From: Octopus bimaculoides
Taxonomy: Eukaryota
Direction of reading: 5' to 3'
Length of the DNA stretch: 64,000 nucleotides
NCBI RefSeq assembly: GCF_001194135.2
Contig: NC_068981.1
Span: 2,582,242 to 2,646,241 of the forward strand
Below, one piece after another: positions 1 to 41,535 of the stretch. Each line of letters starts with the position of its first letter. Positions within the stretch are counted from its first letter, which is position 1. The notes under the pieces were generated by a model that saw only the letters and a list, made by a program, of their open reading frames with translations, had not been told where the DNA came from and ran no database searches. The position numbers and the translations under genes were made by a program.

Positions 1-172
1 CACCACCACCACCACTACCACAACCATTATACTTCCATATCCTTTAATACTGTACCCAATTCAGATTCATCGTGCTTGCATGACTGGTCAGGTCTTCTTC
101 AATACAGCTTATTGTCAATTAAGGACAAACCTCATTCTTTGTCAACTCTTATGTGAGATACATTATATTGAT

Positions 173-400
173 TTCTTTATTGGCCCACAGGGGGCTAAAC
201 ATAGAGAGGACAAACAAGGACAGACAAAAGATTAAATTGACTACATCAACCCCAATGTGTAACTGGTACTTATTTAATTGACCCTGAAAGGATGAAAGGC
301 AAAGTCGACCTCGGCGGAATTTGAACTCAGAACGTAACAGCAGATGAAATACCGCTAAGCATTTCACCTGGCGTGCTAACGATTCTGTCAGCTTGCCGCC
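173..400 (-). mobile_element. tRNA-derived SINE family A (tail type 1)
   Basis: Head ggcggcaagctgacagaa...gagttcaaattcc; similar copies at 25359 and 45738. Confidence 0.85.
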
Positions 401-844
401 CTGAGATCAGTCTGCACTCCTTTATCCCAATTCTACCTTGGTTCCCCACTCAGTCGAGGTGTCTTGTCTTCTAGGCATTTGGTGACCTCAGCAGTGCTGA
501 TGCCATGACAAAAAAACCCTGAACATTCTGTGAAGTGGTTGGCATTAGGAAGGGAATCCAGCAGTAGAGACCGTGCCAAAGTAGGCATTGGAGTTTGGTG
601 CAGTCTTCTGACTCATCAGTTCATGTTGAGCCATCCAACCCATGACAGCATCGAAAAAGAGATGTTAAATTATGATATATAAATATATAAATACGGGGTC
701 CTTTCTTCCTCCATATTCTAGAGAGGCCACTTGCTAGAGAGGCCCTTAGCCAACAGGTTTTGGGATCTGCTGATACACCATAAAGCCCTTTATGGATGCA
801 AAACCTAAGATAGTCCCATAAACTGGCTTTATCTAACTTTAATA

Positions 845-905
<61 letters not shown>

Positions 906-1017
906 TACATATATTTATATTTATATATTTACTTATATATATACATATGTATCTATCAATCTCTCTATATGTGTGTGTGTATATGCTGGTGAGTATTTTA
1001 GAACTTTGTATACATAC

Positions 1018-1062
1018 CTATTCTTGGTCTCCATTCTGGTTCACTTTTCGGATAATATCTCC
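1018..1062 (-). CDS. Coding exon 11, 45 nt, G-type: (G)RYYPKSEPEWRPRI
   Basis: Acceptor ccttttaaatttctttag, donor G|gtatgt; no stop is reached, so the gene continues downstream. Confidence 0.85.
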   Translation of the reverse strand, partial: GDIIRKVNQNGDQE

Positions 1063-1483
1063 CTAAAGAAATTTAAAAGGTAAAACAATTAGCTAATCAG
1101 CTATTTAATTAACACATGTAAATCAATTGTTAAATCATTTCAGACCATCATGTAAACATAACTGTATCTAATTTATACACAAAGCAAGCAATGTTTGAAG
1201 TGAAGCACTTAGTCAATACTGACAACCCCAGTACATAACTGGTACTCCATTTTATTAATGTTGGAAAGCACATAATGATAAGCATAATGATAATTTGTAT
1301 TTCACATTTCATATTTTAAAAAAATATTCCAACATTGAATATTTCAAAAGAAAAGCAGGCTTAGTTTACCAGGAGATGATCAGAAATGAGTAACTCAGAG
1401 CCTTTCAGTTATTAATGAATACACTACAGTTGTATTGAGTCCTGTAGTCCTGTAAATTATAGCTTATGATGAATCAATAGAGA

Positions 1484-1524
<41 letters not shown>

Positions 1525-2315
1525 TAGTCATGAGATCGTAGTTGTGGCCAATGCCAGTGTAGCATAACTGGCCCATTAAAAGTACCTTTCTATCGTTGAG
1601 TAATATGCCAAGCTTGTGAAGACCTGTTGAAATGAGTGAAATCGTAGTTGTGGCTGATGCCAGTGTCATCTGAATGGCACCCATGCCGGTGGCACGCAAA
1701 AAGCATCGTTTGAGTGTTGGGCCTCATGGAGGCAGTGACAGGTGACTGAGACCCTTGGTGATATACTGTACTTGTGTTGACCTGTCAAGTCAAATGAGAC
1801 TGTAGTTGTGGCCAGTACAGGTGGCACATAAAAAGCACCTACTACACTCTCAGAGTGGTTGGTGTTAGGAAGGGCATCCAGCTGTAGAAACCTTGCCAAA
1901 TCAGATTGGAACTTGATGCAGCTCCACTGGCTTACCAGTTTTCAGTCAAACCGTCCAACCCATGCCAGCAAGGAAAGCAGACATTAAAGGATGATGATGA
2001 TGATGATGATGATATATATATATATATATGATGGACTCTCCCATCAAGGATAACATATGAGCATTCAGCTTTTGCAGAACGACCTGCATAAATGATTTGT
2101 TTATAATAAACAAATATTTGTGCTGTACATTAGTTCACTCTCTCCATCAACAGGGGCATGGTGTGCCATGCGTCAGGTTCCATGTGCCAAAGTAATCGCA
2201 GAACAGTGAGAAATGAAGTGCTTTGCTCAAGAACACAATGCACCACCCGGTCTAGGGATTGAAATCACAATATTGTGATTGTAAGTGCAACACCTTAACC
2301 ATCAGGCCAGCACCC

Positions 2316-2370
<55 letters not shown>

Positions 2371-2374
2371 TCAC

Positions 2375-2430
<56 letters not shown>

Positions 2431-4662
2431 ATGTGTGTAAAGTTAAACAAATCAAAAATTTTCTTTACCTCTCAACCAATTCTCTGGTATTGGAAACGTT
2501 GGTTTGTATTCTGAAAAGTTAAATTCCAAAATGAATTCCTTCAATACAATTACTTTAATATATTAATACTTTAGTTTCTCATTCTAATTATTGGGGTTCA
2601 AATGTTAGGATAGTTATGTAATTCATTAAAAGAGGCCAAATTATTTCTGGAGAATGTCTCATATTCTCTCATATTTGCATTCAACAAATCTTACACACAC
2701 ACATATACAAAGAGATCATGTGTGTAAATACTTTATTTGTGTGTTAACAAGTCTACCAATGGTTTCATGACAAGAGAAATCTTTACAATTGTCCAAGTGT
2801 ACACTGCATATCACCATTCAGGATGTGAATACCAAGATAGGAATATTAGTACTTGTCTTAATTTTTGATGAGAATAGCATATATATCTGTCTATATTTAT
2901 CTATCTGTCTATATATAAAATGAAAATGCACTTGGAATCTTTAAGATTTGTTTACATTTATTTAACTAGTTTCACAATTTCATGATTTTCAAAAGAAACT
3001 CTACTGGAGTTTGAAAATTGACTCCTTTTTTAAGGAGAGATTATGGCTTTAAATTACCATCAGCCAAGCTACAATTTGATTGGTTGATGGTGGTCAAAAT
3101 ATTAAGCATAAAATTTAGTTCTCCATAAGATCCATGTATTATCATACCTTCTATGACAGTATGTATAACTGCACCAAAAAAAAAGGCTGCATTCCCCCAG
3201 TGAACATGTCACGTGACAGTATGAATAACAATTGTATGTCATATCCACATGTTAGGCCACATGACATTATAGACGAAATTACACCAATAGACAACACTGT
3301 GCTATTCCAGTAAATATCTAAATGCATTGTTTTTAATACAGGAAAAAAAAACTTCTCTAAGCAAAGGGAAATAATTCCTCAGGACATATATCTGAGTTGT
3401 CTCCAAGCAAACATTTTACACAACTTTCAGTTTCTCACAAGACAAGTACTGTGCAACTCTTGCAGAACTAGAAGACACAGGCTATGGCTACATGGAATTT
3501 CAAAAACTAACTACAATACATTAAATGCTCCAAATCTGCTACTGAGTGCTCATACATGTCTTATACATGTTCAACTCTTTTCTGTTTTATACACACACAC
3601 ATACATTGTTTATTCAAGTATTGAATTGTGTCAAATGTGAGAGGAGTGCTCAACACATTGTACAGCTTATAGTTTATTGAAACTGAATTTTCATTTCATA
3701 TCCCATGACTTGAGTTTCATGCCACTGCAATCTTTGGGTAGGAACTATTACAACTTATATTCACATTTGTCGATGTGGATATGGCTTCACACCTTTTTTT
3801 ATTCACTGGTTTGTGTTTTGCATTTGTTGATTGGCTGTTGTTTGTCAGCCTCTCTGTTGGTTATTTTTGCTGAGAAGGTAAGAGGTGTGTTTTTAATTTG
3901 GCAATTCCTTCTAGATTTATTAAAATAGATAAGGCTGTTCATTTGTTATGTTGTTAGAGGATTTTTAAAGATGTTTGAGAGTATGTGAAACCAGTGATGG
4001 CTTGTAGATAAAATTAATGGGAGTGCTGCTTCAGAAATTTTTTAGACATTATTTTAGTAGTATGTAAAAGGAAACAAACAAAAAAAAAAAAGAAAATTTA
4101 TACATAATCTTGATCAGTTCACATTTTAGCCACTGCTAGGTAGTGTGTTTAATTTGCTCACTGAACACCACCGCAAATTTCCCCTTGTTTTTCAAAAGTC
4201 CCCCCTAAATCACAAAATAAAGGGAAAAAATTTGCCCTATTTTTCAAATCCTGGCAGCAACACTGAAGCTGGAAGCAGGATAATAATCTAATTCTACACT
4301 TTATCACATTCAGGGGTCGATTTGTTCAACTAAAGGTGGTGCTCCAGCATGGCCAGTCAAATGACTGAAACAAGTAAAAGAATAAAAGAAAAAAAGAATA
4401 TAAATATATATATATATATATATAAATAAATACACACACATATATGTGTGCATATGTATTGTTTAAGGCTATATATGTCTGTGTAGGTTAGTGTATATGC
4501 ATGTTAAATACCATTTATTAAATCCATACCTGGTTTAGGTTTCCATCCTGATTTAACTTTTGAATTGATGATCCCTAGAGTGAAAACAATAAAATCTTGT
4601 AAATATATGTATGTAGAATGGTAGTATTCCAACAACATATCCAAAAGAATGTCATCTAATTA

Positions 4663-4695
<33 letters not shown>

Positions 4696-5044
4696 TGCAT
4701 ATATATATATACACACACACACACATTTGGTCATGATGATGATGATGATGGTGATGAAGATATTCATACATGCACACACACACATTTCATTGCTCGTTCT
4801 CTCCTAAATTCTCAGTTCGGTTACGAAGCAGTCATCACTAATGATTGTATCACAGAGTAGACCTTGGTGCATGACACAGTTCTCCCCCCTCATCAGACCC
4901 ATCAAACCACTCAAGCCATGCCGTGATGATGATGATGATATTTAAGGGTGTCTGTCTTCAATAGGATTTGGAGTAGTTGCTGCAGAAATACCACTAAATT
5001 ACTGCTATAGAGATATAAGTTGCATTGGGTGTCTGTGCATATCA

Positions 5045-5114
<70 letters not shown>

Positions 5115-7590
5115 TGATCACCATGATTTAACGTCCATTGTCCATGCTGGCATGGGTTGGACAGTTTGACCGAGGCAGGCAAGTTGGAAGGCTGCACCAG
5201 ACTCCACTCTGATTTGGTATGCTTTGGATGTCTTTCCAAATGTCAACCACCCAGAGAATGTAATGGGTGCTTTTATGTGCCACTGGCACTGGTGCCATTT
5301 GCGTGACACCAGTATCTGCCACGACTGTGATTTTGCTCAGCTTGATGGGGCCTCTTCTCAAGCACGACATAATGCCAAAGGTTTTAGTCATTGCCTCCAT
5401 GAGGCCCAACACTCGAAAGGAACTCAGCTGCTTGCCTCCATGAGGCTCAATGCTCAAAAGGAACTCAGCTACTTTATATATACATAGATAGATAGAGAGA
5501 GAGAGAGAGCGAGAGGGAAAGAGAGACTGAAAGAGGGAGGTTTAGTGGAACAAACATGAGAAATAGAACTCAATACATGTGTTTACAGTAATCCCTTGCC
5601 ATATCACAGTTCACCTATCGCGGTTCACCTATCGTGGTTTATTATTTCAGCTTACGCCAATTCCTCTGTGGTGTTGTTTTGCATTTATAATAAAATAAAT
5701 ATATACAAATTATGAAAATAATCAAAAAAAATATACAGCATAGTACTGTTTCTACTTTGCAGATTTTCACCTATCGTGGGGGAGGCGGGGGTTGAATGTA
5801 ACACCCGTGATAGTTGAGGGATTAATGTATTCTTTTTCATTGGCTGAAAAGTTACAAGATTTCCTGTATAACACTTACAAAACTTTAAACACACACACAC
5901 ACACACATTGATATTCTTTTCTACTCTAGGCACAAGGCCTGAAATTTTGGGGCAGGGGGCCAATCAATTAGATCAACCCCAGTACGCAACTGGTACTTAA
6001 TTTATCAACCCTGAAAGGATGAAAGGCAAAGTCAACTGCGGCGGAGTTTGAACTCAGAACGTAAGGCAGACGAAATACTGCTCAGCATTTCGCCTGGCAT
6101 GCTAACCACTCTGCCAGCTCCCCCCACCTTAAAACACACAGAGATATTATAAACATTATTGTGTATATATGAGTGTAACTGAAATAGTGCAATGATAAAG
6201 ATGTCATAGACTAGTTTACCTGTTCTCATCCACCAAGGTGGCAGTTGAGGTCTATATTCTGAAAAAAAGAAAAAAAGGAAAATTATTTAATTTACTTGAC
6301 CACATCATATTGTTGTATTTTCCATTAATTTATTTATCGATAAAACATATTGTTAGAAAATTACTATTTGTAAATCTGACAATGAGAGATATTCAGCAAC
6401 AGTACTTTGGAGTAAAGATTGTTTGCCAACATAACATGGCAGTCCTGGTTTAGACAAATTATGTTAGCAGACAATCTTTACTCCAAAACATATTGTCTTA
6501 GAAATTCATTGAACTCTGCACTCTTAAAAGAACTGGAGTACTCTGGCTTTCCTTTCTTTCTTTAAATGCTTTTCTGTTCTTTTATTCTTTTACATGTTTC
6601 AGTCATTTGATTGCGGCCATGCTGGAGCATCACCTTAAATGGTTTTTAGTCGAAGAAATCAACCCCAGGACTTAATTCTATAAGTCTCTTTTGTCGAATC
6701 TCTAAGTTACAAAGACATAAGCACTCCATCAAGTGATGACAGGGGAACAAACAGAAATACACAAATATATACATACATACACACATACATACATACATAC
6801 ATAAATACATATGTGTGTGTATGACAAGCTTCTTTCAGTTTCCATCTACCAAATCCAATCACGAGGCTCTGGTCGGCCTTAGACTATAGTAGAAGACACA
6901 TGCAGCTTCATCAGAGCTTCAAACATGAAGTGAAACAGCAAAGTGTTATTCAGGCACTCAACGATGTCTCTGCCGTATCTTATAGTGAAAATAGCTGTGA
7001 GCTAATGAAATTCATAAAATAATCTGATATTCCTTTGCCATGTCTTTTCTTATTACCGCTCTGTACTTGACTAATACTTCATTCAGAAACATACGTATAT
7101 TGAGTTCTACACCATGGTATAAGCATTGCATTGCACACTCAAACGCATGTGTATATGTGTGTGTATGTGTATGTGTATGTGTGTGTGTGTATTGCTTTGT
7201 TTAAGGCTGTATATGTGTCTGTATAGGTTAGTGTATATGCATGTTAAACACCATTTATAAATCCATACCTGGTTTAGGTTTCCATTCTGGTTGACTTCCT
7301 GGAATCAAGATCCCTAGATTGAAAACAATAAAATCGTATAAATATATGTGGAATGGTAGTATTCCAATAACACAAAGACATATATTCAAAGAACATATCC
7401 AAAAGATTGTCATCCAATTAGCAAAGATTTACTAATGAACATGCAATTGTTACTTGTTGATAAATCTGAATACTGTAATATAATATATGACAATTATTCA
7501 GTTGCCATAATAAAACTCCGAGTTTCGAATGTCGGGGTGGAAATCTGCTCTGGCAACTTGTCAGTTATTAAGACAAACAAAGATTGATAA

Positions 7591-7623
<33 letters not shown>

Positions 7624-10383
7624 ATATATATATATATATAACCATCATCATCATCAGCATCATCAATTAACATCTATGATCCATGCTGGTATGGGTTAGA
7701 CAGCTTGATAGTAAATGATGTGTTGAAGAACTGCATCGTATCCCAGAGTCTACTTTGGCATGGTTTCTACAGCTGGAAGCAACCACTTTACTGTGCATAA
7801 TGGCTGCATTTTATTGTAATACCATCACTAATGAAGTCACCATGCACCTTACAATATATATAATCAAATACATGCACACCTGGAGAACAACGTTGCATGG
7901 AAATAATTGTAATGATGAAAAATTAATGTCCAACTGTACGCCTTCTTGTTGAATCCAATTTTTTCAATTACCTATTCACATTTGACAGACGTCCAAATGT
8001 AAAACTGGAAGTACGTTTAATACTACAAGTGGATAGCACAGGGTAAATCTGAAAGTGAATGAGCTTTACTCTGTACTCTGCTACGTTCTTTACAAAATAT
8101 ACCATAAAAGTATGTATGTATTATGATGATATACACAGCATGTACACACACAAACACACAGATATGTTATAAATGCTATTGTGTACATACGAGTGTAATT
8201 GAAATTGTGTAAAGATATAGATGTCATAGACTGGTTTACCTTTTTTCATCCACCAAGGTGGCAGTTGAGGTCTATATTCTGAAAAAAAGAAAAATTGCAA
8301 AATTATTTAATTTACTTGACCATATTATATTGTTGTATTTTCCAATATTTAACTTATTTATCAATTAAATATATTGATTGTCTCAGAAATTCATTGAGCT
8401 CAATTGATTGTTTTACAAATTCATTGAGTTCCCAGCTCTAAAGACAATTGGAGCACTCTGGCATTCTTTTCTTTCTTCCTCTCCTGCTCTTTTTTTAAGT
8501 GTTAGTGTAACTAATATTTATCAGTTCTAAACTTAACTGATGTAGAGGCACATGGCCTAGTTGTTAGAGCAGCAGACTCACAGTTGAGGCATCATGGGTT
8601 CGAATCTAAGACCAGGTGATGTGTGNNNNNNNNNNNNNNNNNNNNNNNNNNNNNNNNNNNNNNNNNNNNNNNNNNNNNNNNNNNNNNNNNNNNNNNNNNN
8701 NNNNNNNNNNNNNNNNNNNNNNNNNGAATCTGAGACCAGGTGATGTGTGTGAAGAATGGGGCGTGCCACTGAGCTTGAACTTTGGTTACGTGTACTTAAA
8801 AGCACATGTTCTGTATATACATATCTGTGTGCAGAAATGTGCATTGTTGAGGGTAGATGTATGAGTTTGTTCTGTTTATGTGTTGAAGTTTGTTTGTTTA
8901 AAAACACATACCTGGTTTAGGTTTAGGTTTCAATTCTGGTTCTCCTCGCAGAGGAAACAATCCTAGATAAAAAGAAGAAAGATTCATTAATGCCTGTTAC
9001 ATTTTTGAAATAAAAACATAAATAAGAGAATGTATCAAAAGTATGACATGCTACTAAAAAAATATTATACGCAGTGTGTAAGAGAAGAGACTGCACTGGT
9101 TTGGTCACATGATGTGGATGGATGAAGACAGTTGCATAGATAAGTACCTATCAGTTAAAGTGGAGGGAAATTGTTGAAGAAGGAGACTCTGGAAGTTATT
9201 AGACAAAGTATGGAAGGCTGGTCTCAAAATACTGAACTTTATGAAGGAGATGACAGAGGACAGAGCTATGTGGGTGTATTGTTGTATTCAAGAAGACCTG
9301 ACCATCACAACAGAATTGATATCCTAAAATCAAAATGCTACATAAAACGCATTGGTGTTGGTATTGGTGCCATGTAAAATTGACTGGTGTTGCTTCTATG
9401 TAAAAATCACTGGTGATGGTGCCATGTAAAAAGCACTGAGTACACTCTGTAAAGTGGTTGGCATTAGGAAGGGTATCCAGCTGTAGAAATGAAGCCAAAA
9501 TAGACTATGGAACCCAATGCAGTCCCTGGCTTTGTCAGTACCTGTCAAGCTGTCCAACCCATGCCAGCATGGAAAACAGACGTTAAATGATGATGATGAT
9601 ATATATAATTATTATTATCATTATTATTATTTGACTTGAATCAGGTTTAGTGTTATTCCTGGTAGAATTTATGTAGGTAACGGGCTACTACCTGTAACTT
9701 TAGATATCTACATGTTTTCAATAATCTCTCAAGTACTCAAAACCCTTCTGATAATTTTTCCTGTTCCCATGAAGCAAACTTCCTGTAGAAGCTCTACAGG
9801 ACAGTCTGTTCCAATCTCCTTCAGCCATTTCTCTACATCATTACTCACAGTCCCTAATGCAGAACCTTTACAGCTTTCATATTTCAAATTCTCTCAATTT
9901 CAAAGTTTAAGGAATTGTATACTTCTAATTTTTCATCTTTCTTTACAATCCTGGAATCTAACAAGCATGAAGGATCAATTAGTAAGCAACATTGCCTTTT
10001 CCTTGACTGTTAATGTTATATCTGGTTTATTATTTTCTATCTTTGTACTTGTCTGAATTGGAAAACCCCATAAAACTTTGCATTTCTCTGACTCGAGTGC
10101 TCTTTCGACTTGTTGATTACAACAAGTGCTTCCAGCTTCAAACTCTCATTTCTGACATGGCACATTGGGCAAGTGTCTTCTACTATAGCCTCGGGCTGAC
10201 CAGAGCCTTGTGAGTGGATTTGGTTGACGGAAGAAGCCGTCATATATGTGGTATATATATANNNNNNNNNNNNNNNNNNNNNNNNNNNNNNNNNNNNNNN
10301 NNNNNNNNNNNNNNNNNNNNNNNNNNNNNNNNNNNNNNNNNNNNNNNNNNNNNNNNNNNNNNNNNNNNNNNNNNNNNNNNNNN

Positions 10384-10416
<33 letters not shown>

Positions 10417-12516
10417 TGTATGTATATGTATGTGTGTGTGTATATGTTTGTGTGTCTGTATTTGTCCCTCCAACATTGCTTGACAACTAATGCTGGTGTG
10501 TTTACGTCCCTGTAACTTAGCAGTTTGGCAAAAGTGACCGATAGAATAAGTACTAGGCTTACAACAAATAAACTCTGGGGGCGATTTGCTCGACTAAAGG
10601 TGGTGCTACAGCATGGCCGCAGTCAAATGACTGAAACAAGTAAAAGAGTAAAAGAGTATATCTGTTAAAATGAAGTGTCAGTATTATTTTCATTTTTGTG
10701 CAATTTAGATGACAATTTATTCACTGCACCCTGTATAAATGGTAGTAAGCTCTAGGAAAAGCTGAACAGCAGATGATCTTTGGAGAAGATGTGCCACTTT
10801 ATGCAAGTGTTTTGACCCTTAGTTGTTTACACTCTAAGGGGTCCGGGCTGCATCCAGGTCCTGACTCCTGGATACCCCTTTGCAGCTATATTATGTGACC
10901 ATGTCTGCATTGTAGTCCTCCTGTGTTTATATAGGTAAGGAGATGGTTGATATAAGCAACAACTTAACTGGCCTAATGAGTGTGCATGCATGTGTGTATG
11001 TGCATGTACATGTGTGTGTGTGTGTGTTTGCCTGCAATTATGTAAAGATATATATGTCATAGTGTGGCTTACCATTACTTTTCCACCAGAGTGGTGATAC
11101 GGGACGTATTGGTTTATACTCTGAAAGAGAAACATTTGTAAGTTATTTAATACACTTTATTAATATCATTTAACTTATTTACCAATAAAATGCAATGGAT
11201 TTTACAGAAACTTATTGAACTTCATATTCGTAAAACAAACTACAAAATCTGTGATTACATTGTAAAGAACTATATTGCATGGGTAGAGCAGTTTGACAGG
11301 ACCTGTCATACTCCAATGTCTGCTTTGGCATGCTTTCTACAGTTTGATGTTCTTCCTAATGCCAGTTACTTTACAGAGAGAACTGGATGCTTTTCTTCAA
11401 TGGCACCAACACTAATGAAGATTGCATTATAATTTGCAAGACAAAGGGCCTGTTAAAAAGAGGTTATTATAACCACTTATTGTTGTTGTTGTTGGCACTC
11501 CGTCGCTTACGACATCGAGGGTTCCAGTTGATCCGATCAATGGAACAGCCTGCTCGTGAAATTAACGTGCAAGTGGCTGAGCACTCCACAGACACGTGTA
11601 CCCTTAACGTAGTTCTCGGGGATATTCAACATGGCACAGTGTGACAAGGCTGACCCTTTGAATTACAGGCACAATAGAAACAGGAAGTAAGAGTGAGAGA
11701 AAGTTGTGGTGGAAGAGTACAGCAGGGTTCGCCACCATCCCCTGCCGGAGCCTCATGGAGCTTTAGGTGTTTTCGCTCAATAAACACTCACAACGCCCGG
11801 TCTGGGAATTGAAACCGCGATCCTATGACCGCGAGTCTGCTGCCCTAACCACTGGGCCATTGTGCCTCCACCATAACCACTTATAAACACTCCTAAAACT
11901 GTTAAATTAGTTTTCAGGTATTTATCTAGGTGTGAACATTCTTAAGACACTTGTCCCTGTCCCTCAGTCATACTTTAATCCATCATCACCTGGCATAAGG
12001 TCACCTCCCTCAATACTACTCCTCATTCAGTTTGAGAGGTCTTGTCTTGTGAGTTGTTTGGCGACCTCACTAGTGCCAGTACCAAGTAAAAATCAGCCGG
12101 TGTGCTCTGTGAAAAGATCTGGGTTAGGAAGGGCATTCAGCTGTAGAAACTATGCCAAAGCAAACACCTCTGATTCTTCAGCTCCTGCCAAACTGTCTAA
12201 TCCTTCACTTGCATGCATGCACACACGTGCGCACACACAGACATGAAATGATTACAAATATATTAGAAACAATTAGAAAGTGGGTTTTCATCAAAAATAT
12301 GGTAATGAAACAGCTTGAAGTGGAGATAATTAAGCATGGAATGTATGGCTGAATGATTAAGAAGCTTGCTTTGTAACCATGTGTTTTCAGGTTCAGTTCC
12401 ACTGCACGGCACCTTGGGCAAGTCTCTTCTACTATAATACCAGGCAGATCAATGCCTTGTGAATTAATTTGATAGATGGAAATTGTATGGAAGCTCTTTG
12501 TCTTTATATATATATC

Positions 12517-12581
<65 letters not shown>

Positions 12582-15500
12582 CTCCCTCACTGCTTGACAA
12601 CCAGTGTTGGTTTGTTCATATTTTCATAACTTAGCAGTTCAGCAAAGGAGACCAATAGATCAAGTGAGCATCAGGCTTTAAAAAAAGCCACAACTAAGTG
12701 GTGGAGTCAATTTGTTTGACTAAGACTTTTCAGAGTAGTACCCAGCATGGCCCCAGTCCAGTGACTGAAACTAGTAAAAGAAAAGAGCTGCAAAAAATGC
12801 AATGGATGAATAAAAATGTTACTTGCTTTGATTAACATCCGAGGCCGGTCCAGAGCTAGGCGGTAATATCCCTTTAAGAAAATAGAAACAGTAAATATTA
12901 GCAATTCATTTATTAATATTTAATTAGTCAGTGTAAATGGAACAGTTACCATTCAAATAGTTTATGTAAGTGTAAACATTAAAATTCAGCAACTGAAAAA
13001 ATAGCTTGCTTTGTCTTTCTTGGTCTAGGGGTATGGTTTTTGCTTAGGGTGCGAGGGGTCCTGGTTTTGAATCCTGGACAAGCTCAATGTCTTATCTGGC
13101 ACATGAAAAGCACCTTTTGAATGCTGGGCCTCACGGAGGCAATGGCAAATGACCAAGACCTTTGGCAATATGCTGTGCTTGAGAAGAAGACCCATCAAGC
13201 CAAGTGAAACCATAGTCATGGCTGATACTGTTGTCACACAACTGGTGCCCATGCTGGTGGCATGTAAAAGCACCCATTACACTCTCAGAGTGGTTGGCAT
13301 TATTAGGAAGGGCATCCAGACGTAGAAACCATGCCAAATCAGACTGGAGTCAGGTGCAGCTCCTCAGCTTACCAGCCCTGGTCAAACCATCCAACCCATG
13401 CCAGCATGGACAACAGAAGCTAAATGACGATGATGATGATAATGATGATGATGATACATATCTTGTGCTTTATTAAAGAAAACATAGCATAAAGCTGAAT
13501 AGAGGTGGGAAGTGATGAGAGGGAAGAGGTAAAGGAGTAGGTCTATTTAGGGCCCACAGTGAATGTGCATCAAGTCATGGATGCTGAAATCTCGGAGAGA
13601 ATAAGAGCAAGATGGATGACGTTTACCTCGGCCATATATGGATATGTTCAAAGCAAAGCTGGACAAGACCATACGTGCCAAACTCCTCAATAGCACTGAC
13701 CTACTTGAACTCTTGTATGCAAGTGAGATGTGGGGTACTTATGAAGATTGAAGAATGAACAGCAATTGGCTTTGGACCATGGAAAGATCTATGCTATGGA
13801 TGTTATTATGAGCGCATGTCCGAAATGAGATAATCTGAGAATGAGTAGAGAGAATGAAGTGGATGCAGAATACTGAAAGCACAATTCCCACAGGGCAGGA
13901 CGGCAGGACACACCACAAGCTTCACGGACAACAGATGGAGCTGTGCAGTTACTGAGTGGTATCCATGAAAGCCTCTACAGCTATGGGAAGACAGTTTAGT
14001 TAAATGATTAGGGCCAAGATAGAAAAAGAATGGTACAATCAAGAAAGAGTTGGAAGCACACTGTGACCAGTGATGTGTAACATTGAATAGTCTGGTCGAC
14101 ACAGTGATATTAAAGAAATATGTGTTGCATACATATACACATATATATATGTTATATATATATATTATGTATCTGTTGTATACATATACAAGTGTGCATG
14201 TGTCTATGTGTGTGTGCATATGTATGTATATTTGTGTGTATGTGTGCCTGTGTGTGTTTGTGTCTGCATGTGTGGATACCGTGTGCTAATTGTGCAGAAA
14301 CAGTGATGCTTGTTTGTAATCTTCCATGAAAACATATCCATAAATCACGCCGTTCAAATTCAAAAGACTAAGCTAAATATTCCCTTCCTTGGAGACAGCC
14401 GAGGGTTGGTAACAATAGTATCTGGTGATAGGAAATCTGCCTTGACAAATTCCGTCTGACCCAGACTAGCATGGAAAAGTGGATGTTGAAACGATGATGA
14501 TGATGTTGATAAGTCATAAGAAATACAAGTATCAAAACATACACATGCACACATACAGAACCATACACACACAATGCACATACATGTATACATACGCACA
14601 TGCACACATACATACACCATAATGATATGTAACAAAAATACTCACCATTCAAATACCAAGGATATCCAAGATATTTCTGGATTCCTTGAACTTCAGAAAA
14701 GGCAATAACTGAAATTGGAAAAAACACCAAGAAATGATTGTTTATAAAACCCCAAAATGATATATTAACGATAAAAAAATTTTACTTGGTAAAACAAAAA
14801 ATGGAAATTATGAACAACAAAAGCAGTATTAGTTTAAAATAGCCATTTATGTATCATACTCAATGCAAATACATCATTGAAAGCTAAATTAACTGTGGCA
14901 TTTGTTTGGTAATATCTGTTAAGGCTGTGTTATGTTAAATGACGTAAAAATGTATCAGTGGCTGACAAAAATTGTCCAGCAGTAGAGATGGGCACCACCG
15001 CTGCAGGACAAAATTGTCTGCTACTGACATATTTTTGTGTTACTAGACATCATGCATTCTCACTTTTTCATAACTGGTGACAAGGAAAAAGAGAAAAAGA
15101 AAAAACAGGAAAGAAAATACTTAGTCAAAACAGTTTTGTATAAATGTGATGAAATTCACCCGTCATTTTATTCAGGGTGCAACATTAGCAATTCACAAAT
15201 ATATTCGTTCCAATGCTTTTTGAGGACTGGAAGTGTAGTAGAGTCAGAATATTTTCTGAGAATGTGCACTTTCAGGTGTTCTTCAAAATCACAGCTGTTT
15301 GATGTAAAATGTTCAGCAATTTCCATCGAACAACTGCTATTGTGCCTGATATCACACCCACTGAATCTTTTATTTTATTGTTCTGTTGCACAACCAACAT
15401 AAATTAAATTGTGTTTGGTGCATTCTGCTGTGTACACCAAATGGTAAACTTTACATATCCCACCTTTCATATAAATCCTTATATTTCTGTGATGATTCGT

Positions 15501-17528
15501 GATGGAATTCACTTGAATCATGTTGTTGCAAAATAAACAGAGTTTACCTCTCTTTTGGCTGTTTTTCAAGGAGCAGCATTCAAAAACTCCAATGGTAGTT
15601 TTCTTGGGATTAGAGATAGTGGTTAATAGGTCTCTTATATTTTTATTGCATCTAAAGTCTACAATAGGCCGCTGAGCAAATATTTGTTTGAAACCAAGAT
15701 ATTTTTCTGAAATATACTGGCAACTTTCATGCAACACTTTTGAAAGGCCAGTGAAATTTCAGTGCCTAAAGGAATTTGATCACAAATTTTATTTTGGCTA
15801 CTAAAATTATGAGTGAAAGTTTGACTTTCCTTGCTAATTTTTGCTATGTCATTTGCAAGTTCCTTAACTGCGTTTGACATAATGCATTTGCATATTTCCA
15901 GTGATCCCAAAGGCGGCGAGCTGATAGAAGCATTAGCATGCCAGACAAAATGCTTAGCGGTATTTCGTCTGTCTTCACATTCTGAGTTCAAATGCTGCCA
16001 GGGTCGACTCTGGTCGACTCTGCCTTTCATCCTTTCGGGGTTGGTAAAATAAGTACCAATTGAGCACTGAGGTCGATGTAATCGACTTACTCCCTCCCCC
16101 AAAGTTTCAAGCCTTGTGCTTACAGTAGACAGGATATTTCCAGTAATCCCTTATATCAGTACAAATCCATTTTATCTTCAAAAACTAGGATTTCGGATTT
16201 GATCTAATTATACCATGTGGATGATCAGAGTGGCAGTGGAGGTAAATGTGGGATGATGTGGGCTGGTGAAATAACTCTGACCCTATTCTGCCTTCTGAAA
16301 ACTTAACTTTTGTGTCCAAAATCTCAATGGTAGGTTTTGAAAAACCTGTGTAAGCATTTAACTTGTTTGGGCACGCTTACGTTAAAAAACTATTTTAGAA
16401 TGACTTTTTTCTGTTAAAACGCTAAAAATAACTGACCAACAAAAAAAAAAAAGAAAAAGATTCAACCAAATCCAAAAATAAACCCAAATACTAAGCGAAC
16501 AAAGATGCAAAACAACAGAAACATACATTAAAAATAAAACAAATTAAAAAAAAAATAGGTAAAAAATCTTTTAAATTTTCAAAGGTGAAGTCAGATGGGT
16601 TTTATTTAGGCATATCATAAAAGTAAGTATAAAGAATTGCTAAATATAAAGAAAAGTATGTTTTTTCAAGCAAATACGGTTAGAAAAAGTATTTGCCATT
16701 TCAAGTCATCATTAAAAACAAAGCTTATCAATTTTTGAATGAAATAATAATTTCATTCTTTTATTGTAAGTTGTAAATTTTGCTCGAGAAATAAAGCAAA
16801 TAATCACCGAATGCATTGTTAAAAATCTGCAACTTGATAGCAAATATCTTCGAATTGATTAGAAATGCATTAATTTAATGATAATGACGCTAAATAAAAT
16901 ATGGTTGAGAATTACCAAAGAAATTACTCTATCTCAACAAAAAAAAACAGCACGTACCTTTATAGAGAACAGATTGTATTCAAGTGAAACATACCAAATA
17001 CACAGAGTTGAAACACTGTTTGATTATTCTTTTCAGCGTTGAATGTTAACCATCACACGTCCATTGCACTTGCACACACACACACACACATTCATATACC
17101 CCAACCATCCCACTTCCATTGCGCTTGCACACGCACACAAACACACACACATTCAGATACCCCAAGTTTAAACGTTGTTTGATTTATTCTTTTCAGCGTA
17201 CAATTTTCATCATCCCACTATCGAGTATGACATCATCCCATCCTTCCTTATTCATGTATCACCCCTTCCTTTCTCATTCATAAACACAAGATTATGATTA
17301 TAGTAGATTATCTCGGTAACCATGGGAGCTATGAAAAAATACAAAGCCCAGCATCACCACTGGATCATTCTACATATATGTATAGGTCTTCGCACAATTC
17401 CACCCAGCCGTTTGACCGTGAATCCCAAGACAAGAAAGAATCGCCCGTGTCAAATTTATATGTATAGATATTTCAACATGTAACTTACCCGCCAGCAAAG
17501 CTACCAAAGCAAAACAGGGTTTGCTCAT
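1018..17528 (-). CDS. Spliced micro-exon gene (3'-incomplete) encoding a secreted Pro/Trp/Lys-rich repeat protein: MSKPCFALVALLAVIAFSEVQGIQKYLGYPWYLNGILPPSSGPASDVNQKYKPIRPVSPLWWKSNGLFPLRGEPELKPKPKPEYRPQLPPWWMKKGILIPGSQPEWKPKPEYRPQLPPWWMRTGIINSKVKSGWKPKPEYKPTFPIPENWLRGRYYPKSEPEWRPRI... (167 aa visible)
   Basis: 11 exons, each with an AG acceptor after a pyrimidine tract and a GT donor (one GC). All junctions are phase 1 and join into one stop-free frame of 502 nt. The N-terminus is hydrophobic, and two paralogous exon types alternate strictly. Confidence 0.88.
1520..2010 (+). mobile_element. RTE 3'UTR fragment with internal tandem units and (GAT)n tail
   Basis: Matches the RTE 3' family seen at 13100, 34945 and 60660. 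Confidence 0.8.
2469..2510 (-). CDS. Coding exon 10, 42 nt, E-type: (E)YKPTFPIPENWLR
   Basis: Acceptor tttaacttttcag, donor G|gtaaag. Confidence 0.87.
4530..4574 (-). CDS. Coding exon 9, 45 nt, G-type: (G)IINSKVKSGWKPKP
   Basis: Acceptor ttttattgttttcactctag, donor G|gtatgg. Confidence 0.87.
5112..5465 (-). mobile_element. RTE 3' fragment
   Basis: Reverse copy of the same 3'UTR family. Confidence 0.8.
5586..5827. mobile_element. Tigger/pogo-type MITE
   Basis: TA|cagtaatccct ... agggattaatg|TA terminal inverted repeats. Confidence 0.7.
5917..6120 (-). mobile_element. SINE family A (tail type 2)
   Basis: Same head and core, with tail cccccaaaatttcaggccttgtgcc. Confidence 0.85.
6220..6258 (-). 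CDS. Coding exon 8, 39 nt, E-type: (E)YRPQLPPWWMRT
   Basis: Acceptor ttttttttcag, donor G|gtaaac, 37 of 39 nt identical to exon 6. Confidence 0.88.
6578..6900 (-). mobile_element. SINE family B, 5'-truncated
   Basis: Reverse family match. Confidence 0.8.
7269..7313 (-). CDS. Coding exon 7, 45 nt, G-type: (G)ILIPGSQPEWKPKP
   Basis: Acceptor ttttattgttttcaatctag, donor G|gtatgg. Confidence 0.88.
8240..8278 (-). CDS. Coding exon 6, 39 nt, E-type: (E)YRPQLPPWWMKK
   Basis: Acceptor ttttttttcag, donor G|gtaaac. Confidence 0.88.
8912..8962 (-). CDS. Coding exon 5, 51 nt, G-type: (G)LFPLRGEPELKPKPKP
   Basis: Acceptor ctttcttctttttatctag, donor G|gtatgt, has one extra KP unit. Confidence 0.88.
9075..9600 (+). 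mobile_element. RTE LINE 3' fragment with (ATG)n tail
   Basis: ERRLHWFGHMMWMDEDSC...VEG then the shared 3'UTR ggttggcattaggaagggtatccagctgtagaaa...gacgttaaatgatgatg. Confidence 0.8.
9610..10135 (-). mobile_element. R4/Dong-like non-LTR retrotransposon 3' end (restriction-like endonuclease) with (TAA)n tail
   Basis: SEKCKVLWGFPIQT...NKPDI...ALGTVSNDVEKWL...GTGKIIRRVLST* followed by taataataat. Confidence 0.8.
10155..10657 (+). mobile_element. SINE family B with internal TA/TG microsatellite (contains a gap)
   Basis: ggcaagtgtcttctactatagcc...tttgtccctccaaca...ggtggtgctacagcatggccgcagtcaaatgactgaaacaagtaaaagag. Confidence 0.85.
11073..11120 (-). CDS. Coding exon 4, 48 nt, E-type: (K/E)YKPIRPVSPLWWKSN
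   Basis: Acceptor tttctctttcag, donor G|gtaagc, paralogous to exons at 8240, 6220 and 2469. Confidence 0.88.
11481..11872 (-). mobile_element. Full-length tRNA-derived SINE (family C) with 12-bp TSD
   Basis: tRNA-like head tggaggcacaatggcccagtggttagggcagc, (CAA)n tail, TSD ataaccacttat at 11469-11480 and 11873-11884. Confidence 0.9.
12335..12787 (+). mobile_element. SINE family B, near full length
   Basis: tRNA-like head (gttcagttccactgc), internal (TG)n, shared tail. Confidence 0.85.
12827..12871 (-). CDS. Coding exon 3, 45 nt, G-type: (G)ILPPSSGPASDVNQ, predicted GC donor
   Basis: Acceptor tttctattttcttaaag. Starts GG ATA TTA like its paralogues. The donor gcaagt gives 45 nt and keeps frame, whereas the next GT (4 nt further) would shift it. 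Confidence 0.68.
13100..13455 (+). mobile_element. RTE 3' fragment (end of ORF plus 3'UTR and tail)
   Basis: GLTEAMANDQDLWQYAVLEK then the shared 3'UTR and (GAT)n. Confidence 0.85.
13530..14090 (+). mobile_element. RTE-clade LINE RT/C-terminal fragment (second RTE subtype)
   Basis: VYLGP...EISERIRARW...LLYASEMW...MERSML...AGHTTSFTDNRWSCAVTEWYP, with stops. Confidence 0.8.
14646..14708 (-). CDS. Coding exon 2, 63 nt: (V)IAFSEVQGIQKYLGYPWYLN
   Basis: Acceptor ttttttccaatttcag, donor G|gtgagt; completes the signal peptide with a VQG-type cleavage motif. Confidence 0.88.
15120..15780 (-). mobile_element. Penelope-like element fragment (GIY-YIG endonuclease region)
   Basis: PIVDFRCNKNIRDLL linker, Cys pairs, LVYTAEC...LIYVG motif, downstream IAEHF. 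Confidence 0.8.
15911..16136 (+). mobile_element. SINE family A (tail type 2)
   Basis: ggcggcgagctg...gagttcaaat...aataagtaccaattg. Confidence 0.85.
17489..17528 (-). CDS. Coding exon 1 (ATG plus first half of signal peptide, MSKPCFALVALLA); whole exon is 17489-17557 including 5'UTR
   Basis: Acceptor ttttcttttttctctag, start context GGCATCATGA, donor G|gtaagt, phase 1. Confidence 0.85.
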
Positions 17529-25800: not shown

Positions 25801-26645
25801 TTAGGTTGTCCAGAAAGTTCTGAGCGTTTTTAAGCTAAGTCTTTTAACACGTTATTGAACACACCTGAAACGTAACACAGTTAAAACTTTGGCGTCGCTT
25901 GAAGTGGAAGTGCATCTCTTCTTTGTTCCTGACTGAAAATAGATTTATCTTTCATTCCAGTTACCCTTTATTGACATTTGAAATGGATAACCAAAAATTT
26001 CATATTCGCATTGTAATGCTTTTCTTTCTTAAAAAAAAAAGGAGAAAATGCTGCAAAGACTTGTAAAAACATTTGGGAAGTTTATGGTGATGATGCTGTA
26101 GGTAAATCAACTGTTCGAAGGGGGTTTGCAAAATTTAAGCCTGGAGAGTTTAGTTTGGGAGATGAAAGTCATAGTGGAAGACCTTCAAAATTGGATGAAG
26201 ATGTTCTGAAGGCAAAAATCGAAGAAAACTCAAATATCACGATTAGAGGACTTGCAGAGTTGGAAGTTTCTAAAAGTATGATTCATGAACACCCAGTGAA
26301 GCTAGGATACATTTCTCGCTATAATGTATGGGTCCCTCACAAACTCTCAGAAAAGAATTCCTTGGACCGGTATTCCGTTTATGATATGCTTTTGAAACAG
26401 AATAAAAGCATGCCTTTTTTGAAACAACTTGTGACTGGAAATGAACAACAAATAGTGAACAAAAATGTAGTGTGGGAAAGATCATGGAGTTTGGATAAGG
26501 ATCCTCCAAAACAGCAACCAAAGACAAATATCCATGTCAAAAAAGCTATGCTTTGTGTTTGGTAGGATAATAAAGACATTATTTATTATGCGCTTCTCCC
26601 ACAAAACCAGACCATTAATTCTAATGTGTATTGTTGTCAGTTGGC
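25801..26645 (+). mobile_element. Mariner transposon, decayed (5' TIR plus N-terminal two thirds of transposase)
   Basis: TA followed by TIR ttaggttgtccagaaagttc. ATG 25983 reads MDNQKFHIRIVML..., with WVPHKL, VTGNE (first catalytic D mutated) and KAMLCVW* motifs. Frameshifted, and truncated at a SINE. Confidence 0.92.
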
Positions 26646-41119: not shown

Positions 41120-41535
41120 TAATGGATCTTGTATCAAAATGTTAAACGTTGTAAACAATGGTTTGGTAAAAGGGAAAAAGCTCAACCACAACAGAGAAGG
41201 GAACTTCATGGAAAAAAGGTTCTTCTCTCTATCTGGTAGGATTGCAAAGAGGTAATTCACTTTGAATTGTTACCACCTAATGCAACAATCAATGCTCAAG
41301 TCTACTGTCAGCAATCAGAGCGTTTGAACCAAGCTTTGAAGAAAAAAAGATCAGCTTTAGTGAATCGAAAAGGAGTGATGTTTCATCAGGACAATGTGTG
41401 ACCCCACACTGCGAAGATCACATCACAGAAGATTGAAGAGCTTGGTTGGGAAAAAAATTCCTCATCCACCTTATTCTCCCGACCTGGCTCCTTCAGACTA
41501 CCATTTGTTTCATAGTTTACAGAATCATTTGAGGG
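41120..41535 (+). mobile_element. Mariner transposase catalytic-domain fragment (runs into gap)
   Basis: KKVLLSIW*D, FHQDNV*PH and PHPPYSPDLAPSDYHLF motifs of DD34D transposases. Confidence 0.93.

What the first reader, a model, noticed from the sequence alone, without database searches (positions are those of the whole stretch)
1018..14708. All ten internal exons are symmetric phase-1, a MEG-like modular architecture
Seen: lengths 63, 45, 48, 51, 39, 45, 39, 45, 42 and 45 nt are all divisible by 3 with phase 1-1 ends, so any subset can be skipped in frame. Established: schistosome micro-exon genes (MEGs) use signal peptide plus short symmetric exons to generate variant secreted proteins. Inference: this locus may produce a combinatorial isoform set, a convergent micro-exon system in a mollusc.
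Basis: partly seen in the sequence, partly recalled or inferred. Interest (0 to 1): 0.72.

Follow-up and report, generated by a model that had tools for sequence, protein, structure and literature searches.

The report
Octopus repeat-protein gene of duplicated short exons
This is an Octopus bimaculoides gene, already in RefSeq, for a secreted proline/lysine/tryptophan-rich repeat protein whose ten short in-frame exons arose by tandem duplication of an exon pair; this layout resembles the elastin gene more than schistosome micro-exon genes, and nothing yet shows that the exons are skipped.

Summary
On the minus strand, ten short exons (63, 45, 48, 51, 39, 45, 39, 45, 42 and 45 nt) lie between 14708 and 1018. 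All have AG acceptors. Nine have GT donors and one has a GC donor. All are phase 1-1 and join into one open frame. Both assembly gaps are intronic.

RefSeq already models the gene as XP_052830051.1, "adhesive plaque matrix protein-like", Octopus bimaculoides, with no isoform label.

The exons alternate between two types: A (EY[KR]P…WW) and B (G-I…PEWKPKP). Their intron flanks are homologous, so the gene grew by tandem duplication of an A+B pair. The uniform phase is therefore inherited, not ten independent events.

The product has a signal peptide, 20% Pro, 12% Lys, 7.5% Trp, no Cys and pI 10. It looks disordered and has no detectable homologue.

The MEG reading is only partly supported:
- Every exon exceeds the ≤36-bp MEG limit.
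- The exons are repeats of each other.
- There is no homology to any MEG.

Tropoelastin is the closer architectural analogue. The gene may also continue beyond the window.

The parts
17489..17528 (-). Exon 1: ATG plus the first 13 1/3 codons (MSKPCFALVALLA-). It encodes the first half of the signal peptide. Donor CGG|gtaagt, phase 1.
   Evidence: Matches the N-terminus of XP_052830051.1.
14646..14708 (-). Exon 2, 63 nt, phase 1-1: (V)IAFSEVQG|IQKYLGYPWYLN. It encodes the second half of the signal peptide, the predicted cleavage site after G22 and the start of the mature protein.
   Evidence: AlphaFold2 helix at residues 3-27.
12827..12871 (-). Exon 3, 45 nt, phase 1-1, degenerate B type (G)ILPPSSGPASDVNQ. 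GC donor (AAA|gcaagt).
11073..11120 (-). Exon 4, 48 nt, phase 1-1, A type (K)YKPIRPVSPLWWKSN.
   Evidence: 69% identity over 127 nt to the exon 6 region.
10262..10383 (.). Assembly gap in intron 4, inside a (TA)n microsatellite.
8912..8962 (-). Exon 5, 51 nt, phase 1-1, B type (G)LFPLRGEPELKPKPKP.
8626..8725 (.). Assembly gap in intron 5. Its flanks repeat the same 24 bases with one mismatch, so it is probably an overlap of contig ends.
8240..8278 (-). Exon 6, 39 nt, phase 1-1, A type (E)YRPQLPPWWMKK.
   Evidence: 87.6% identity over 225 nt to the exon 8 region.
7269..7313 (-). Exon 7, 45 nt, phase 1-1, B type (G)ILIPGSQPEWKPKP.
   Evidence: 84.6% identity over 195 nt to the exon 9 region.
6220..6258 (-). 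Exon 8, 39 nt, phase 1-1, A type (E)YRPQLPPWWMRT. It is a duplicate of exon 6.
4530..4574 (-). Exon 9, 45 nt, phase 1-1, B type (G)IINSKVKSGWKPKP. It is a duplicate of exon 7 with a diverged 5' half.
2469..2510 (-). Exon 10, 42 nt, phase 1-1, A type (E)YKPTFPIPENWLR.
998..1062 (-). Exon 11. The 45-nt B-type exon (G)RYYPKSEPEWRPRI occupies 1062-1018 and has a consensus donor TAG|gtatgt. The RefSeq model reads through this donor to a TAA that ends at 998 (…GMYTKF*). An ATTAAA lies at about 843.

Best explanation
The locus is one lineage-restricted Octopus bimaculoides gene (RefSeq XP_052830051.1). It encodes a secreted, strongly cationic, cysteine-free, intrinsically disordered repeat protein rich in Pro, Lys, Trp and Tyr.

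How the gene grew: a genomic unit holding two short exons was duplicated in tandem.
- Type A exons encode E-Y-[KR]-P-x(3-6)-P-x-W-[WL]-x-[KR]-x.
- Type B exons encode G-[IL]-x-x-P-x-S-x-P-E-[WL]-[KR]-P-[KR]-P.
- Each exon is bounded by phase-1 introns.

The signal-peptide exon ends in phase 1, so only 1-1 units could be added without breaking the frame. The uniform 'symmetric phase-1' pattern is therefore inherited by descent. It makes cassette skipping possible, as in tropoelastin, but is not evidence that skipping happens.

Shown: the exon structure, the duplication, the protein composition, the signal peptide and the lack of homologues.

Inferred: the mature protein acts as an extracellular cohesive or adhesive matrix, or as a coacervating material. 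The proposed basis is Lys/Arg-Trp/Tyr cation-pi contacts on a proline-stiffened backbone, analogous to mussel foot protein 1 and its tryptophan-based relative Pvfp-1. By default the gene is spliced constitutively to the full-length form.
For: - Exon coordinates, splice sites, phases and the open frame.
- An identical RefSeq protein with a single name and no isoform label.
- Self-BLAST and alignments show homology that extends into the intron flanks: exon 6 vs exon 8, 87.6% over 225 nt; exon 7 vs exon 9, 84.6% over 195 nt; exon 4 vs exon 6, 69% over 127 nt.
- The A/B alternation is unbroken from exon 3 to exon 11.
- The A exon is more conserved than its flanks (94.9% vs 86.6%, not significant). 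This is the pattern expected if the coding sequence is under constraint.
- Mature protein: Pro 20.5%, Lys 11.6%, Trp 7.5%, Tyr 6.2%, no Cys, pI 10.1, net charge +16, GRAVY -1.05.
- AlphaFold2 gives only the signal-peptide helix (residues 3-27) and otherwise low-confidence coil (mean pLDDT 60, pTM 0.18).
- No Pfam family, no sequence relative among solved structures, and no credible hit among 1.84 billion representative proteins.
- Motif-level resemblance of WKPKPEYKPTF to the mussel fp-1 decapeptide YKAKPSYPPTY.
- Pvfp-1 uses modified Trp in place of DOPA (PMC4275877).
- In tropoelastin all splice sites are phase 1:1 and two exon classes alternate (PMC12554196).
- Phase-1 introns after signal peptides and 1-1 exon shuffling are characteristic of secreted proteins (PMC7259759).
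Against: - There are no expression, tissue or protein data, so the adhesive or matrix function rests on composition alone.
- The B-exon pair 7/9 has diverged more than its intron flanks (75.6% vs 90.9%, Fisher p = 0.0097). All 11 substitutions change amino acids. This hints at diversification, not simple structural constraint.
- Short 39-51-nt exons in 0.6-2.8 kb introns, plus one GC donor, are features often linked to alternative splicing (my own knowledge, not tested here).
- The 3' end of the gene is uncertain.
Confidence: 0.7

Rival explanations
1. One reading: a MEG-like, convergent micro-exon system. Regulated cassette skipping of the symmetric exons would produce a combinatorial pool of secreted variants.
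For: - A signal peptide is followed by short symmetric exons, and all 1024 skip combinations stay in frame with no junction stop.
- The exons are short (39-63 nt) relative to their introns (0.6-2.8 kb), and one donor is GC.
- B exons 7 and 9 diverged faster than their flanking introns, entirely through amino-acid changes. This recalls the accelerated evolution reported for MEGs (PMC4350168).
- The gene is an orphan, as MEG families are.
Against: - No isoform is on record. There is a single RefSeq model with all exons and no other matching protein in 5.8 billion clusters.
- All exons exceed the <=36-bp MEG criterion (PMC8293314).
- The exons are repeats of each other and their phase is inherited by duplication.
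- Exon 2 carries half of the signal peptide and is not freely skippable.
- Apart from the one GC donor, the splice sites are close to consensus.
- Octopus is free-living, so the immune-evasion rationale proposed for MEGs does not apply.
Confidence: 0.15
2. The ten exons are only the 5' part of a longer gene. Exon 11 would splice onward, beyond the left edge of the window, to further phase 1-1 exons. RefSeq would then have cut one gene into two models.
For: - The exon 11 donor is consensus (TAG|gtatgt), like the other B exons. The annotated C-terminus is just a 6-codon read-through of that donor.
- 4.7 kb downstream, at L001 31253-31297, lies an intact 45-nt B-type exon (cag|GA…CCAG|gt) encoding GSYFPKSEPEWRPTP. 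It is phase 1-1 and 82% identical to exon 11 over 62 nt.
- A 1840-nt gap between the two could hide an A exon.
- The next annotated gene starts at an ATG inside a 108-nt phase 1-1 exon. That exon's frame and Tyr/Pro-rich style continue 12 codons upstream to an acceptor (YPPVYPVYPLPV-MPRYPYPYSYP…), and there is no signal peptide.
Against: - An ATTAAA lies 175 nt after exon 11, so termination there is possible.
- The downstream exon's donor (gtttga) is weak.
- The 223-aa downstream protein could not be retrieved, and the ATG exon could instead end at AAG|gtatcc after 8 nt.
- No transcript evidence is available.
Confidence: 0.35
3. The product is a precursor or carrier of cationic Pro/Trp-rich bioactive peptides (antimicrobial, indolicidin or PrAMP-like) and not a structural material.
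For: Net charge +16, Pro 20%, Trp 7.5%, no Cys, a signal peptide, and segments such as ILIPGSQPEWKPKP…PPWWMKK. The resemblance to Trp/Pro-rich antimicrobial peptides comes from my own knowledge and was not tested.
Against: - There are no regular dibasic or amidation processing sites between the repeats. There is one KK, and Gly follows the basic residues instead of preceding them.
- 9 Glu are interspersed through the sequence.
- There is no homology to any antimicrobial peptide or neuropeptide family.
Confidence: 0.1

Closest known systems
Tropoelastin (ELN) gene architecture
   Same: [quoted passage not shown]
- The coding sequence is made of many small exons amid much longer introns.
- Two exon classes alternate strictly. 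In elastin these are hydrophobic and Lys-rich cross-linking exons; here they are the A and B types.
- The gene expanded by exon replication.
- The product is a secreted, disordered, Pro- and Lys-containing matrix protein.
- The architecture allows cassette-like exon removal without a frameshift (PMC12554196).
   Different: - There is no sequence homology.
- The composition differs: Trp, Tyr, Lys and Pro here, against Gly, Val, Ala and Pro in elastin.
- There are no KA/KP cross-linking motifs.
- This gene is much smaller (11 or more exons, about 170 aa).
- Alternative splicing is documented for tropoelastin but untested here.
- This is an invertebrate orphan gene.
Schistosome micro-exon genes (MEGs)
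   Same: - A signal peptide is followed by a string of very short symmetric exons separated by long introns.
- The genes are orphans.
- There is a hint of faster-than-neutral change in part of the coding sequence (PMC4350168).
   Different: - MEG exons are mainly <=36 bp, mostly 15 bp. Here they are 39-63 bp.
- MEG variation through exon skipping is demonstrated. Here it is not.
- These exons are repeats of one another and encode a periodic protein.
- MEGs are reported as restricted to platyhelminths or schistosomes and are tied to the host interface (PMC4350168, PMC8293314).
Mussel foot protein 1 ('adhesive plaque matrix protein') and Perna viridis Pvfp-1
   Same: - All are secreted, basic, Pro/Lys/aromatic-rich tandem-repeat proteins.
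- The motif [aromatic]-K-x-K-P-x-Y-x-P-T-[aromatic] is shared at the level of style.
- Pvfp-1 relies on Trp instead of DOPA (PMC4275877).
- This similarity is the source of the RefSeq name.
   Different: - The similarity is not significant (E = 0.07).
- The repeat here is a two-part unit of about 28-33 residues split over two exons, not a decapeptide.
- There is no WxxW C-mannosylation motif.
- No adhesive role or modification has been shown.

Membership tests
Schistosome micro-exon genes (MEG) | Most of the coding region is made of very short symmetric exons. The criterion is <=36 bp in PMC8293314. A 2023 re-annotation gives 6-81 bp, with most exons 15 bp. | tested here: inconclusive
   462 of the 522 annotated coding nt lie in symmetric exons, but all are 39-63 nt. 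This fails the <=36-bp criterion and falls inside the broader 6-81 bp range.
Schistosome micro-exon genes (MEG) | N-terminal signal peptide and a secreted product. | tested here: met
   MSKPCFALVALLAVIAFSEVQG|IQ has an n-region with Lys, a 14-residue hydrophobic core and V-x-G at positions -3/-1. AlphaFold2 predicts a helix at residues 3-27. No dedicated signal-peptide predictor was available.
Schistosome micro-exon genes (MEG) | A pool of protein variants produced by skipping of the micro-exons. | not testable with these tools
The only indirect evidence is a single RefSeq protein with no isoform label and no shorter variants in the protein collection.
Schistosome micro-exon genes (MEG) | Sequence membership of one of the MEG families, which are restricted to platyhelminths. 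| tested here: not met
   phmmer against 1.84 billion representatives found only one spurious repeat hit (E = 2.4e-4). There is no Pfam hit. The organism is a cephalopod.
Tropoelastin-type modular matrix gene (architecture class, not a homology family) | Every intron/exon border is phase 1:1. | tested here: met
   Exon 1's donor and all ten following exons are phase 1.
Tropoelastin-type modular matrix gene (architecture class, not a homology family) | Two classes of small exons alternate, and the gene expanded by exon replication. | tested here: met
   The order is B-A-B-A-B-A-B-A-B from exon 3 to exon 11. Homology extends into the intron flanks.
Tropoelastin-type modular matrix gene (architecture class, not a homology family) | Sequence homology to elastin (hydrophobic PGVGV-type domains and KA/KP cross-linking domains). 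| tested here: not met
   No homologue of any kind was detected. The composition is Trp/Tyr/Lys/Pro-rich with only 3 Val and 1 Ala.
Tropoelastin-type modular matrix gene (architecture class, not a homology family) | Documented cassette-like alternative splicing. | not testable with these tools
Mussel foot protein 1 / adhesive plaque matrix protein | Long tandem array of the decapeptide consensus (AKPSYPPTYK type). | tested here: not met
   The repeat is a two-part unit of about 28-33 residues. BLASTP against ten copies of the decapeptide gives E = 0.07, which reflects composition or motif only.
Mussel foot protein 1 / adhesive plaque matrix protein | Modified aromatic residues and hydroxyproline (DOPA, or hydroxy-/mannosyl-Trp in Pvfp-1), and location in an adhesive secretion. 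| not testable with these tools
   This needs protein chemistry. PMC4275877 describes the modifications in mussels.
Neuropeptide / processed cationic peptide precursor | Repeated peptides flanked by dibasic cleavage sites, often with Gly before the basic pair for amidation. | tested here: not met
   There is only one KK (…WWMKK-G), and Gly follows the basic residues. No regular KR or RR sites are present.

The most novel reading that the evidence does not exclude
An octopus-specific orphan gene for a tryptophan-rich secreted protein uses its phase 1-1 exon pairs as cassettes. Its transcripts would encode a graded or combinatorial series of repeat numbers. The N-terminal half of the B exons would be under diversifying selection. 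That would make it a MEG/tropoelastin-style variant generator in a free-living mollusc, possibly tuning an adhesive or matrix material.
Probability: 0.12. Interest if true: 0.6.

Novelty: new member of a known kind. Interest (0 to 1): 0.3.

Why it matters
If the conservative reading is right, this is one more case of a well-understood route to secreted repeat proteins: a signal-peptide exon in phase 1, followed by tandem duplication of 1-1 exons. Its main value is as a candidate cephalopod biomaterial protein with an unusual composition (Trp 7.5%, Pro 20%, Lys 12%, no Cys). That composition could interest people who study cation-pi based underwater adhesion or coacervation.

It also flags a probable mis-annotation. 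The RefSeq model ends by reading through a consensus donor, while further in-phase exons lie downstream.

Only direct evidence of exon skipping would make it a notable example of a micro-exon-style diversity system outside flatworms.

Tried and rejected
- Homologues: the word-indexed search found only the RefSeq protein itself. Exhaustive phmmer found one hit (P0002), which on inspection is a translated repeat and not a relative. Pfam gave 0 families. PDB sequences gave only noise, E >= 0.35.
- Downstream gene: a 72-aa query built from my reading of its first two exons found no candidate. Its sequence, and the rest of that locus, could not be fetched.
- Literature: no paper mentions XP_052830051. 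The only paper holding both 'adhesive plaque matrix protein' and 'octopus' is an unrelated study of vent animals. No paper reports micro-exon genes in molluscs; the hits were all schistosome papers.
- Hidden exons: tblastn of every exon peptide against the 36.5-kb locus at permissive settings found no decayed extra copies in the sequenced introns.
- Paralogues in the window: motif and composition scans of all six frames found none upstream of the gene.
- Non-coding RNA: no Rfam family and no tRNA gene was found in the window.
- Structure: single-sequence AlphaFold2 gave low confidence, so I made no fold search.
- Rejected as explanations: chance (the splice sites, the open frame and the independent RefSeq model all agree), and an artefact of the assembly gaps (both are intronic).

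Full report
**What is there.** Reading 1-17000 on both strands shows the feature is a gene on the minus strand. Ten short exons lie at:
- 14708-14646
- 12871-12827
- 11120-11073
- 8962-8912
- 8278-8240
- 7313-7269
- 6258-6220
- 4574-4530
- 2510-2469
- 1062-1018

Each follows a pyrimidine tract and an AG. Nine are followed by GT. The 45-nt exon at 12871-12827 is followed by gcaagt, a GC donor. Every exon begins with two bases that finish a codon and ends with one base that starts the next, so all are phase 1-1. That frame is open in all ten exons and is the only open frame in six of them. Joined, they give an uninterrupted 153-residue reading.

**Independent confirmation and identity.** A protein search returned one hit at 100% identity and coverage. 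It is a 173-aa protein named 'adhesive plaque matrix protein-like [Octopus bimaculoides]', XP_052830051.1. It is the only member of its cluster, is seen on one contig and carries no 'isoform' label. Its gene lies on chromosome record CM046601.1 of GCA_001194135.2. Exon 1 (ATG…, 40 nt of coding sequence, donor CGG|gtaagt, phase 1) is at window 17528-17489, outside the finding's range.

**Assembly gaps, tested first.** Both gaps are intronic.
- Gap 8626-8725 lies between the 51-nt and 39-nt exons. The 24 bases before the gap are repeated, with one mismatch, directly after it. This is what overlapping contig ends look like, so the gap is probably empty.
- Gap 10262-10383 sits inside a (TA)n run, between the 48-nt and 51-nt exons.

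Frame continuity therefore does not depend on either gap. The strict alternation of exon types is kept across both, and a permissive tblastn with every exon peptide found no extra decayed exon in the sequenced introns. A hidden exon pair cannot be formally excluded, because gap lengths are only estimates.

**Why all exons are symmetric.** From exon 3 on, the exons alternate between two types.
- A type: (E/K)Y[KR]P…P.W[WL]… This covers exons 4, 6, 8 and 10.
- B type: G[IL]..P.S.PE[WL][KR]P[KR]P. This covers exons 5, 7, 9 and 11, with exon 3 a degenerate copy.

A self-comparison of the locus shows that the similarity runs into the introns:

| Pair | Identity | Length |
|---|---|---|
| exon 6 region vs exon 8 region | 87.6% | 225 nt |
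| exon 7 region vs exon 9 region | 84.6% | 195 nt |
| exon 4 region vs exon 6 region | 69% | 127 nt |

The gene therefore grew by tandem duplication of a two-exon genomic unit, now 2.0-2.7 kb after SINE and microsatellite insertions. Exon 1 ends in phase 1, so only 1-1 units can be added in frame. The 'ten out of ten' pattern is one inherited property, not ten coincidences.

This is the ordinary way secreted modular and repeat proteins are built. Phase-1 introns follow signal peptides, and 1-1 exon shuffling is typical of extracellular proteins (PMC7259759).

**In-frame skipping.** The arithmetic claim is right. All 1024 subsets keep the frame and create no junction stop, because exons end in G or A. 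There is one limit. Intron 1 splits the hydrophobic core of the signal peptide, and exon 2 supplies its second half and the predicted cleavage site (…AVIAFSEVQG|IQKY…). Exon 2 is therefore unlikely to be dispensable.

**The protein.** The signal peptide is clear by inspection, and the only confident helix in an AlphaFold2 model covers residues 3-27. The rest of the model is coil at pLDDT 50-70, with pTM 0.18. The model was made from a single sequence, so this is only consistent with disorder and does not prove it. The mature in-window part (146 aa) has these properties:
- Pro 20.5%, Lys 11.6%, Trp 7.5%, Tyr 6.2%
- no Cys
- pI 10.1 and net charge +16
- GRAVY -1.05

There is no Pfam family, no sequence relative among solved structures, and no credible relative among 1.84 billion representative proteins. 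The single hit, P0002, is a translated repeat. The gene is an orphan as far as these collections show.

The RefSeq name reflects a motif-level likeness to the mussel fp-1 decapeptide (WKPKPEYKPTF against YKAKPSYPPTY). A tryptophan-based relative exists in mussels: Pvfp-1, in which modified Trp stands in for DOPA (PMC4275877).

My functional proposal is a cohesive or adhesive extracellular material held together by cation-pi contacts. It is an inference from composition only.

**A hint of diversification.** For the youngest duplicate pairs, I compared each exon with about 190 nt of its flanking intron:

| Pair | Exon identity | Flanking intron identity | Test |
|---|---|---|---|
| A exons 6 and 8 | 94.9% | 86.6% | not significant |
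| B exons 7 and 9 | 75.6% | 90.9% | Fisher p = 0.0097 |

For the B pair, all 11 differences fall in the first 28 nt and all change amino acids (8 of 14 residues). The WKPKP end is identical between the two. The numbers are small and the choice of sub-region is post hoc.

**Comparison with MEGs.** MEGs are defined by a signal peptide plus a coding region made mainly of symmetric exons of <=36 bp. Their skipping yields pools of variants, and they are reported as restricted to schistosomes or platyhelminths (PMC8293314, PMC4350168). A recent re-annotation gives 6-81 bp, with most exons 15 bp (bioRxiv 10.1101/2023.06.21.545858).
- Here the signal peptide is present and the exons are symmetric.
- Every exon exceeds 36 bp.
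- The exons are repeats of each other.
- There is no homology to any MEG.
- The only indirect evidence on splicing is that RefSeq lists one product with all exons, and the protein collection holds no shorter variant.

No paper in the library reports micro-exon genes in molluscs.

**A closer analogue.** In tropoelastin all splice sites are phase 1:1. Small hydrophobic and cross-linking exons alternate, parts of the gene arose by exon replication, and this architecture permits cassette-like removal of exons (PMC12554196). The octopus gene shares all the architectural points but no sequence homology. So the locus 'works like' a tropoelastin-type modular gene. Whether it also splices like one is open.

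**Unresolved 3' end.** In RefSeq the last of the ten exons is terminal. The model reads through the consensus donor TAG|gtatgt for six codons (…RPRIGMYTKF*, ending at 998). An ATTAAA lies 175 nt further on.

The fetched locus extends 9 kb past the window. In that stretch, after a 1840-nt gap, there is an intact 45-nt B-type exon (cag|GA…CCAG|gt) encoding GSYFPKSEPEWRPTP at L001 31253-31297. It is 82% identical to exon 11 over 62 nt.

Further on, the next annotated gene (223 aa) starts at an ATG inside a 108-nt phase 1-1 exon. That exon's open frame and Tyr/Pro-rich style continue 12 codons upstream to an acceptor, and it has no signal peptide. The two models may be one longer gene. I could not retrieve the downstream protein, so this stays a hypothesis, which I put at about 0.35.

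**Verdict.** The locus is an already-annotated, lineage-restricted gene for a secreted Pro/Lys/Trp-rich repeat protein, built by exon-pair duplication. It is a new member of a known kind of gene architecture. Combinatorial splicing is possible but unsupported.

Noticed in passing
L001 31253-31297 (about 4.7 kb beyond the left edge of the window, minus strand of the chromosome): An intact 45-nt B-type exon copy (GSYFPKSEPEWRPTP), phase 1-1, with a good acceptor and a weak GT donor. It is 82% identical to exon 11 over 62 nt. It is a possible unannotated twelfth exon. A 1840-nt assembly gap (L001 27529-29368) lies between it and exon 11.
   Followed up: partly
L001 33996-34103 and 35668 onward: The next annotated gene (223 aa) begins at an ATG inside a 108-nt phase 1-1 exon. 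The Tyr/Pro-rich reading frame of that exon continues 12 codons upstream to an acceptor (YPPVYPVYPLPV-MPRYPYPYSYPSFPLSGQPGFPY), and there is no signal peptide. It may be the 3' part of the same gene. The protein could not be retrieved.
   Followed up: partly
window 8602-8625 and 8726-8749: The 24 bases on each side of the 100-N gap are the same sequence with one mismatch (GAATCT[A/G]AGACCAGGTGATGTGTG). The gap is probably an unmerged overlap of contig ends inside a repeat.
   Followed up: yes
window 634, 1954, 5142, 7681, 9553, 13390 and ten more sites up to 62541: A dispersed repeat with the core CCATGCTGGCATGGGTTGGA occurs 16 times in the window on both strands, against 0 expected by chance. 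Five copies lie in the gene's introns and one lies just past its 3' end. It is probably an octopus SINE, and it explains why only about 200 nt around each duplicated exon still aligns.
   Followed up: partly
window 26155-26565 (+) and 41394-41535 (+): Mariner/Tc1-type transposase fragments. The first matches Pfam Transposase_1 (E = 1.9e-5). The second carries the PHPPYSPDLAPSDYHLF motif next to a gap.
   Followed up: partly
window about 15380-15660 (-), inside intron 1: A Cys-rich open stretch (…CSLKNSQKRGKLCLFCNN…YHLVYTAECTKHNLIYVG…) that looks like a relic of a mobile-element endonuclease. There is no significant Pfam match (best E = 0.008, below the cut-off).
   Followed up: partly
window 12827-12826 boundary (donor of the 45-nt exon 3): The only non-GT donor in the gene is AAA|gcaagt, a GC-AG intron. 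From my own knowledge, GC donors are often associated with alternative splicing. This was not tested.
   Followed up: no
whole window: There are fourteen runs of N (10 to 753 nt) in 64 kb, and the sequence is dense in microsatellites (CA, TA, CT, GAT). No Rfam family and no tRNA gene was found. No paralogue of the gene occurs upstream in the window.
   Followed up: yes
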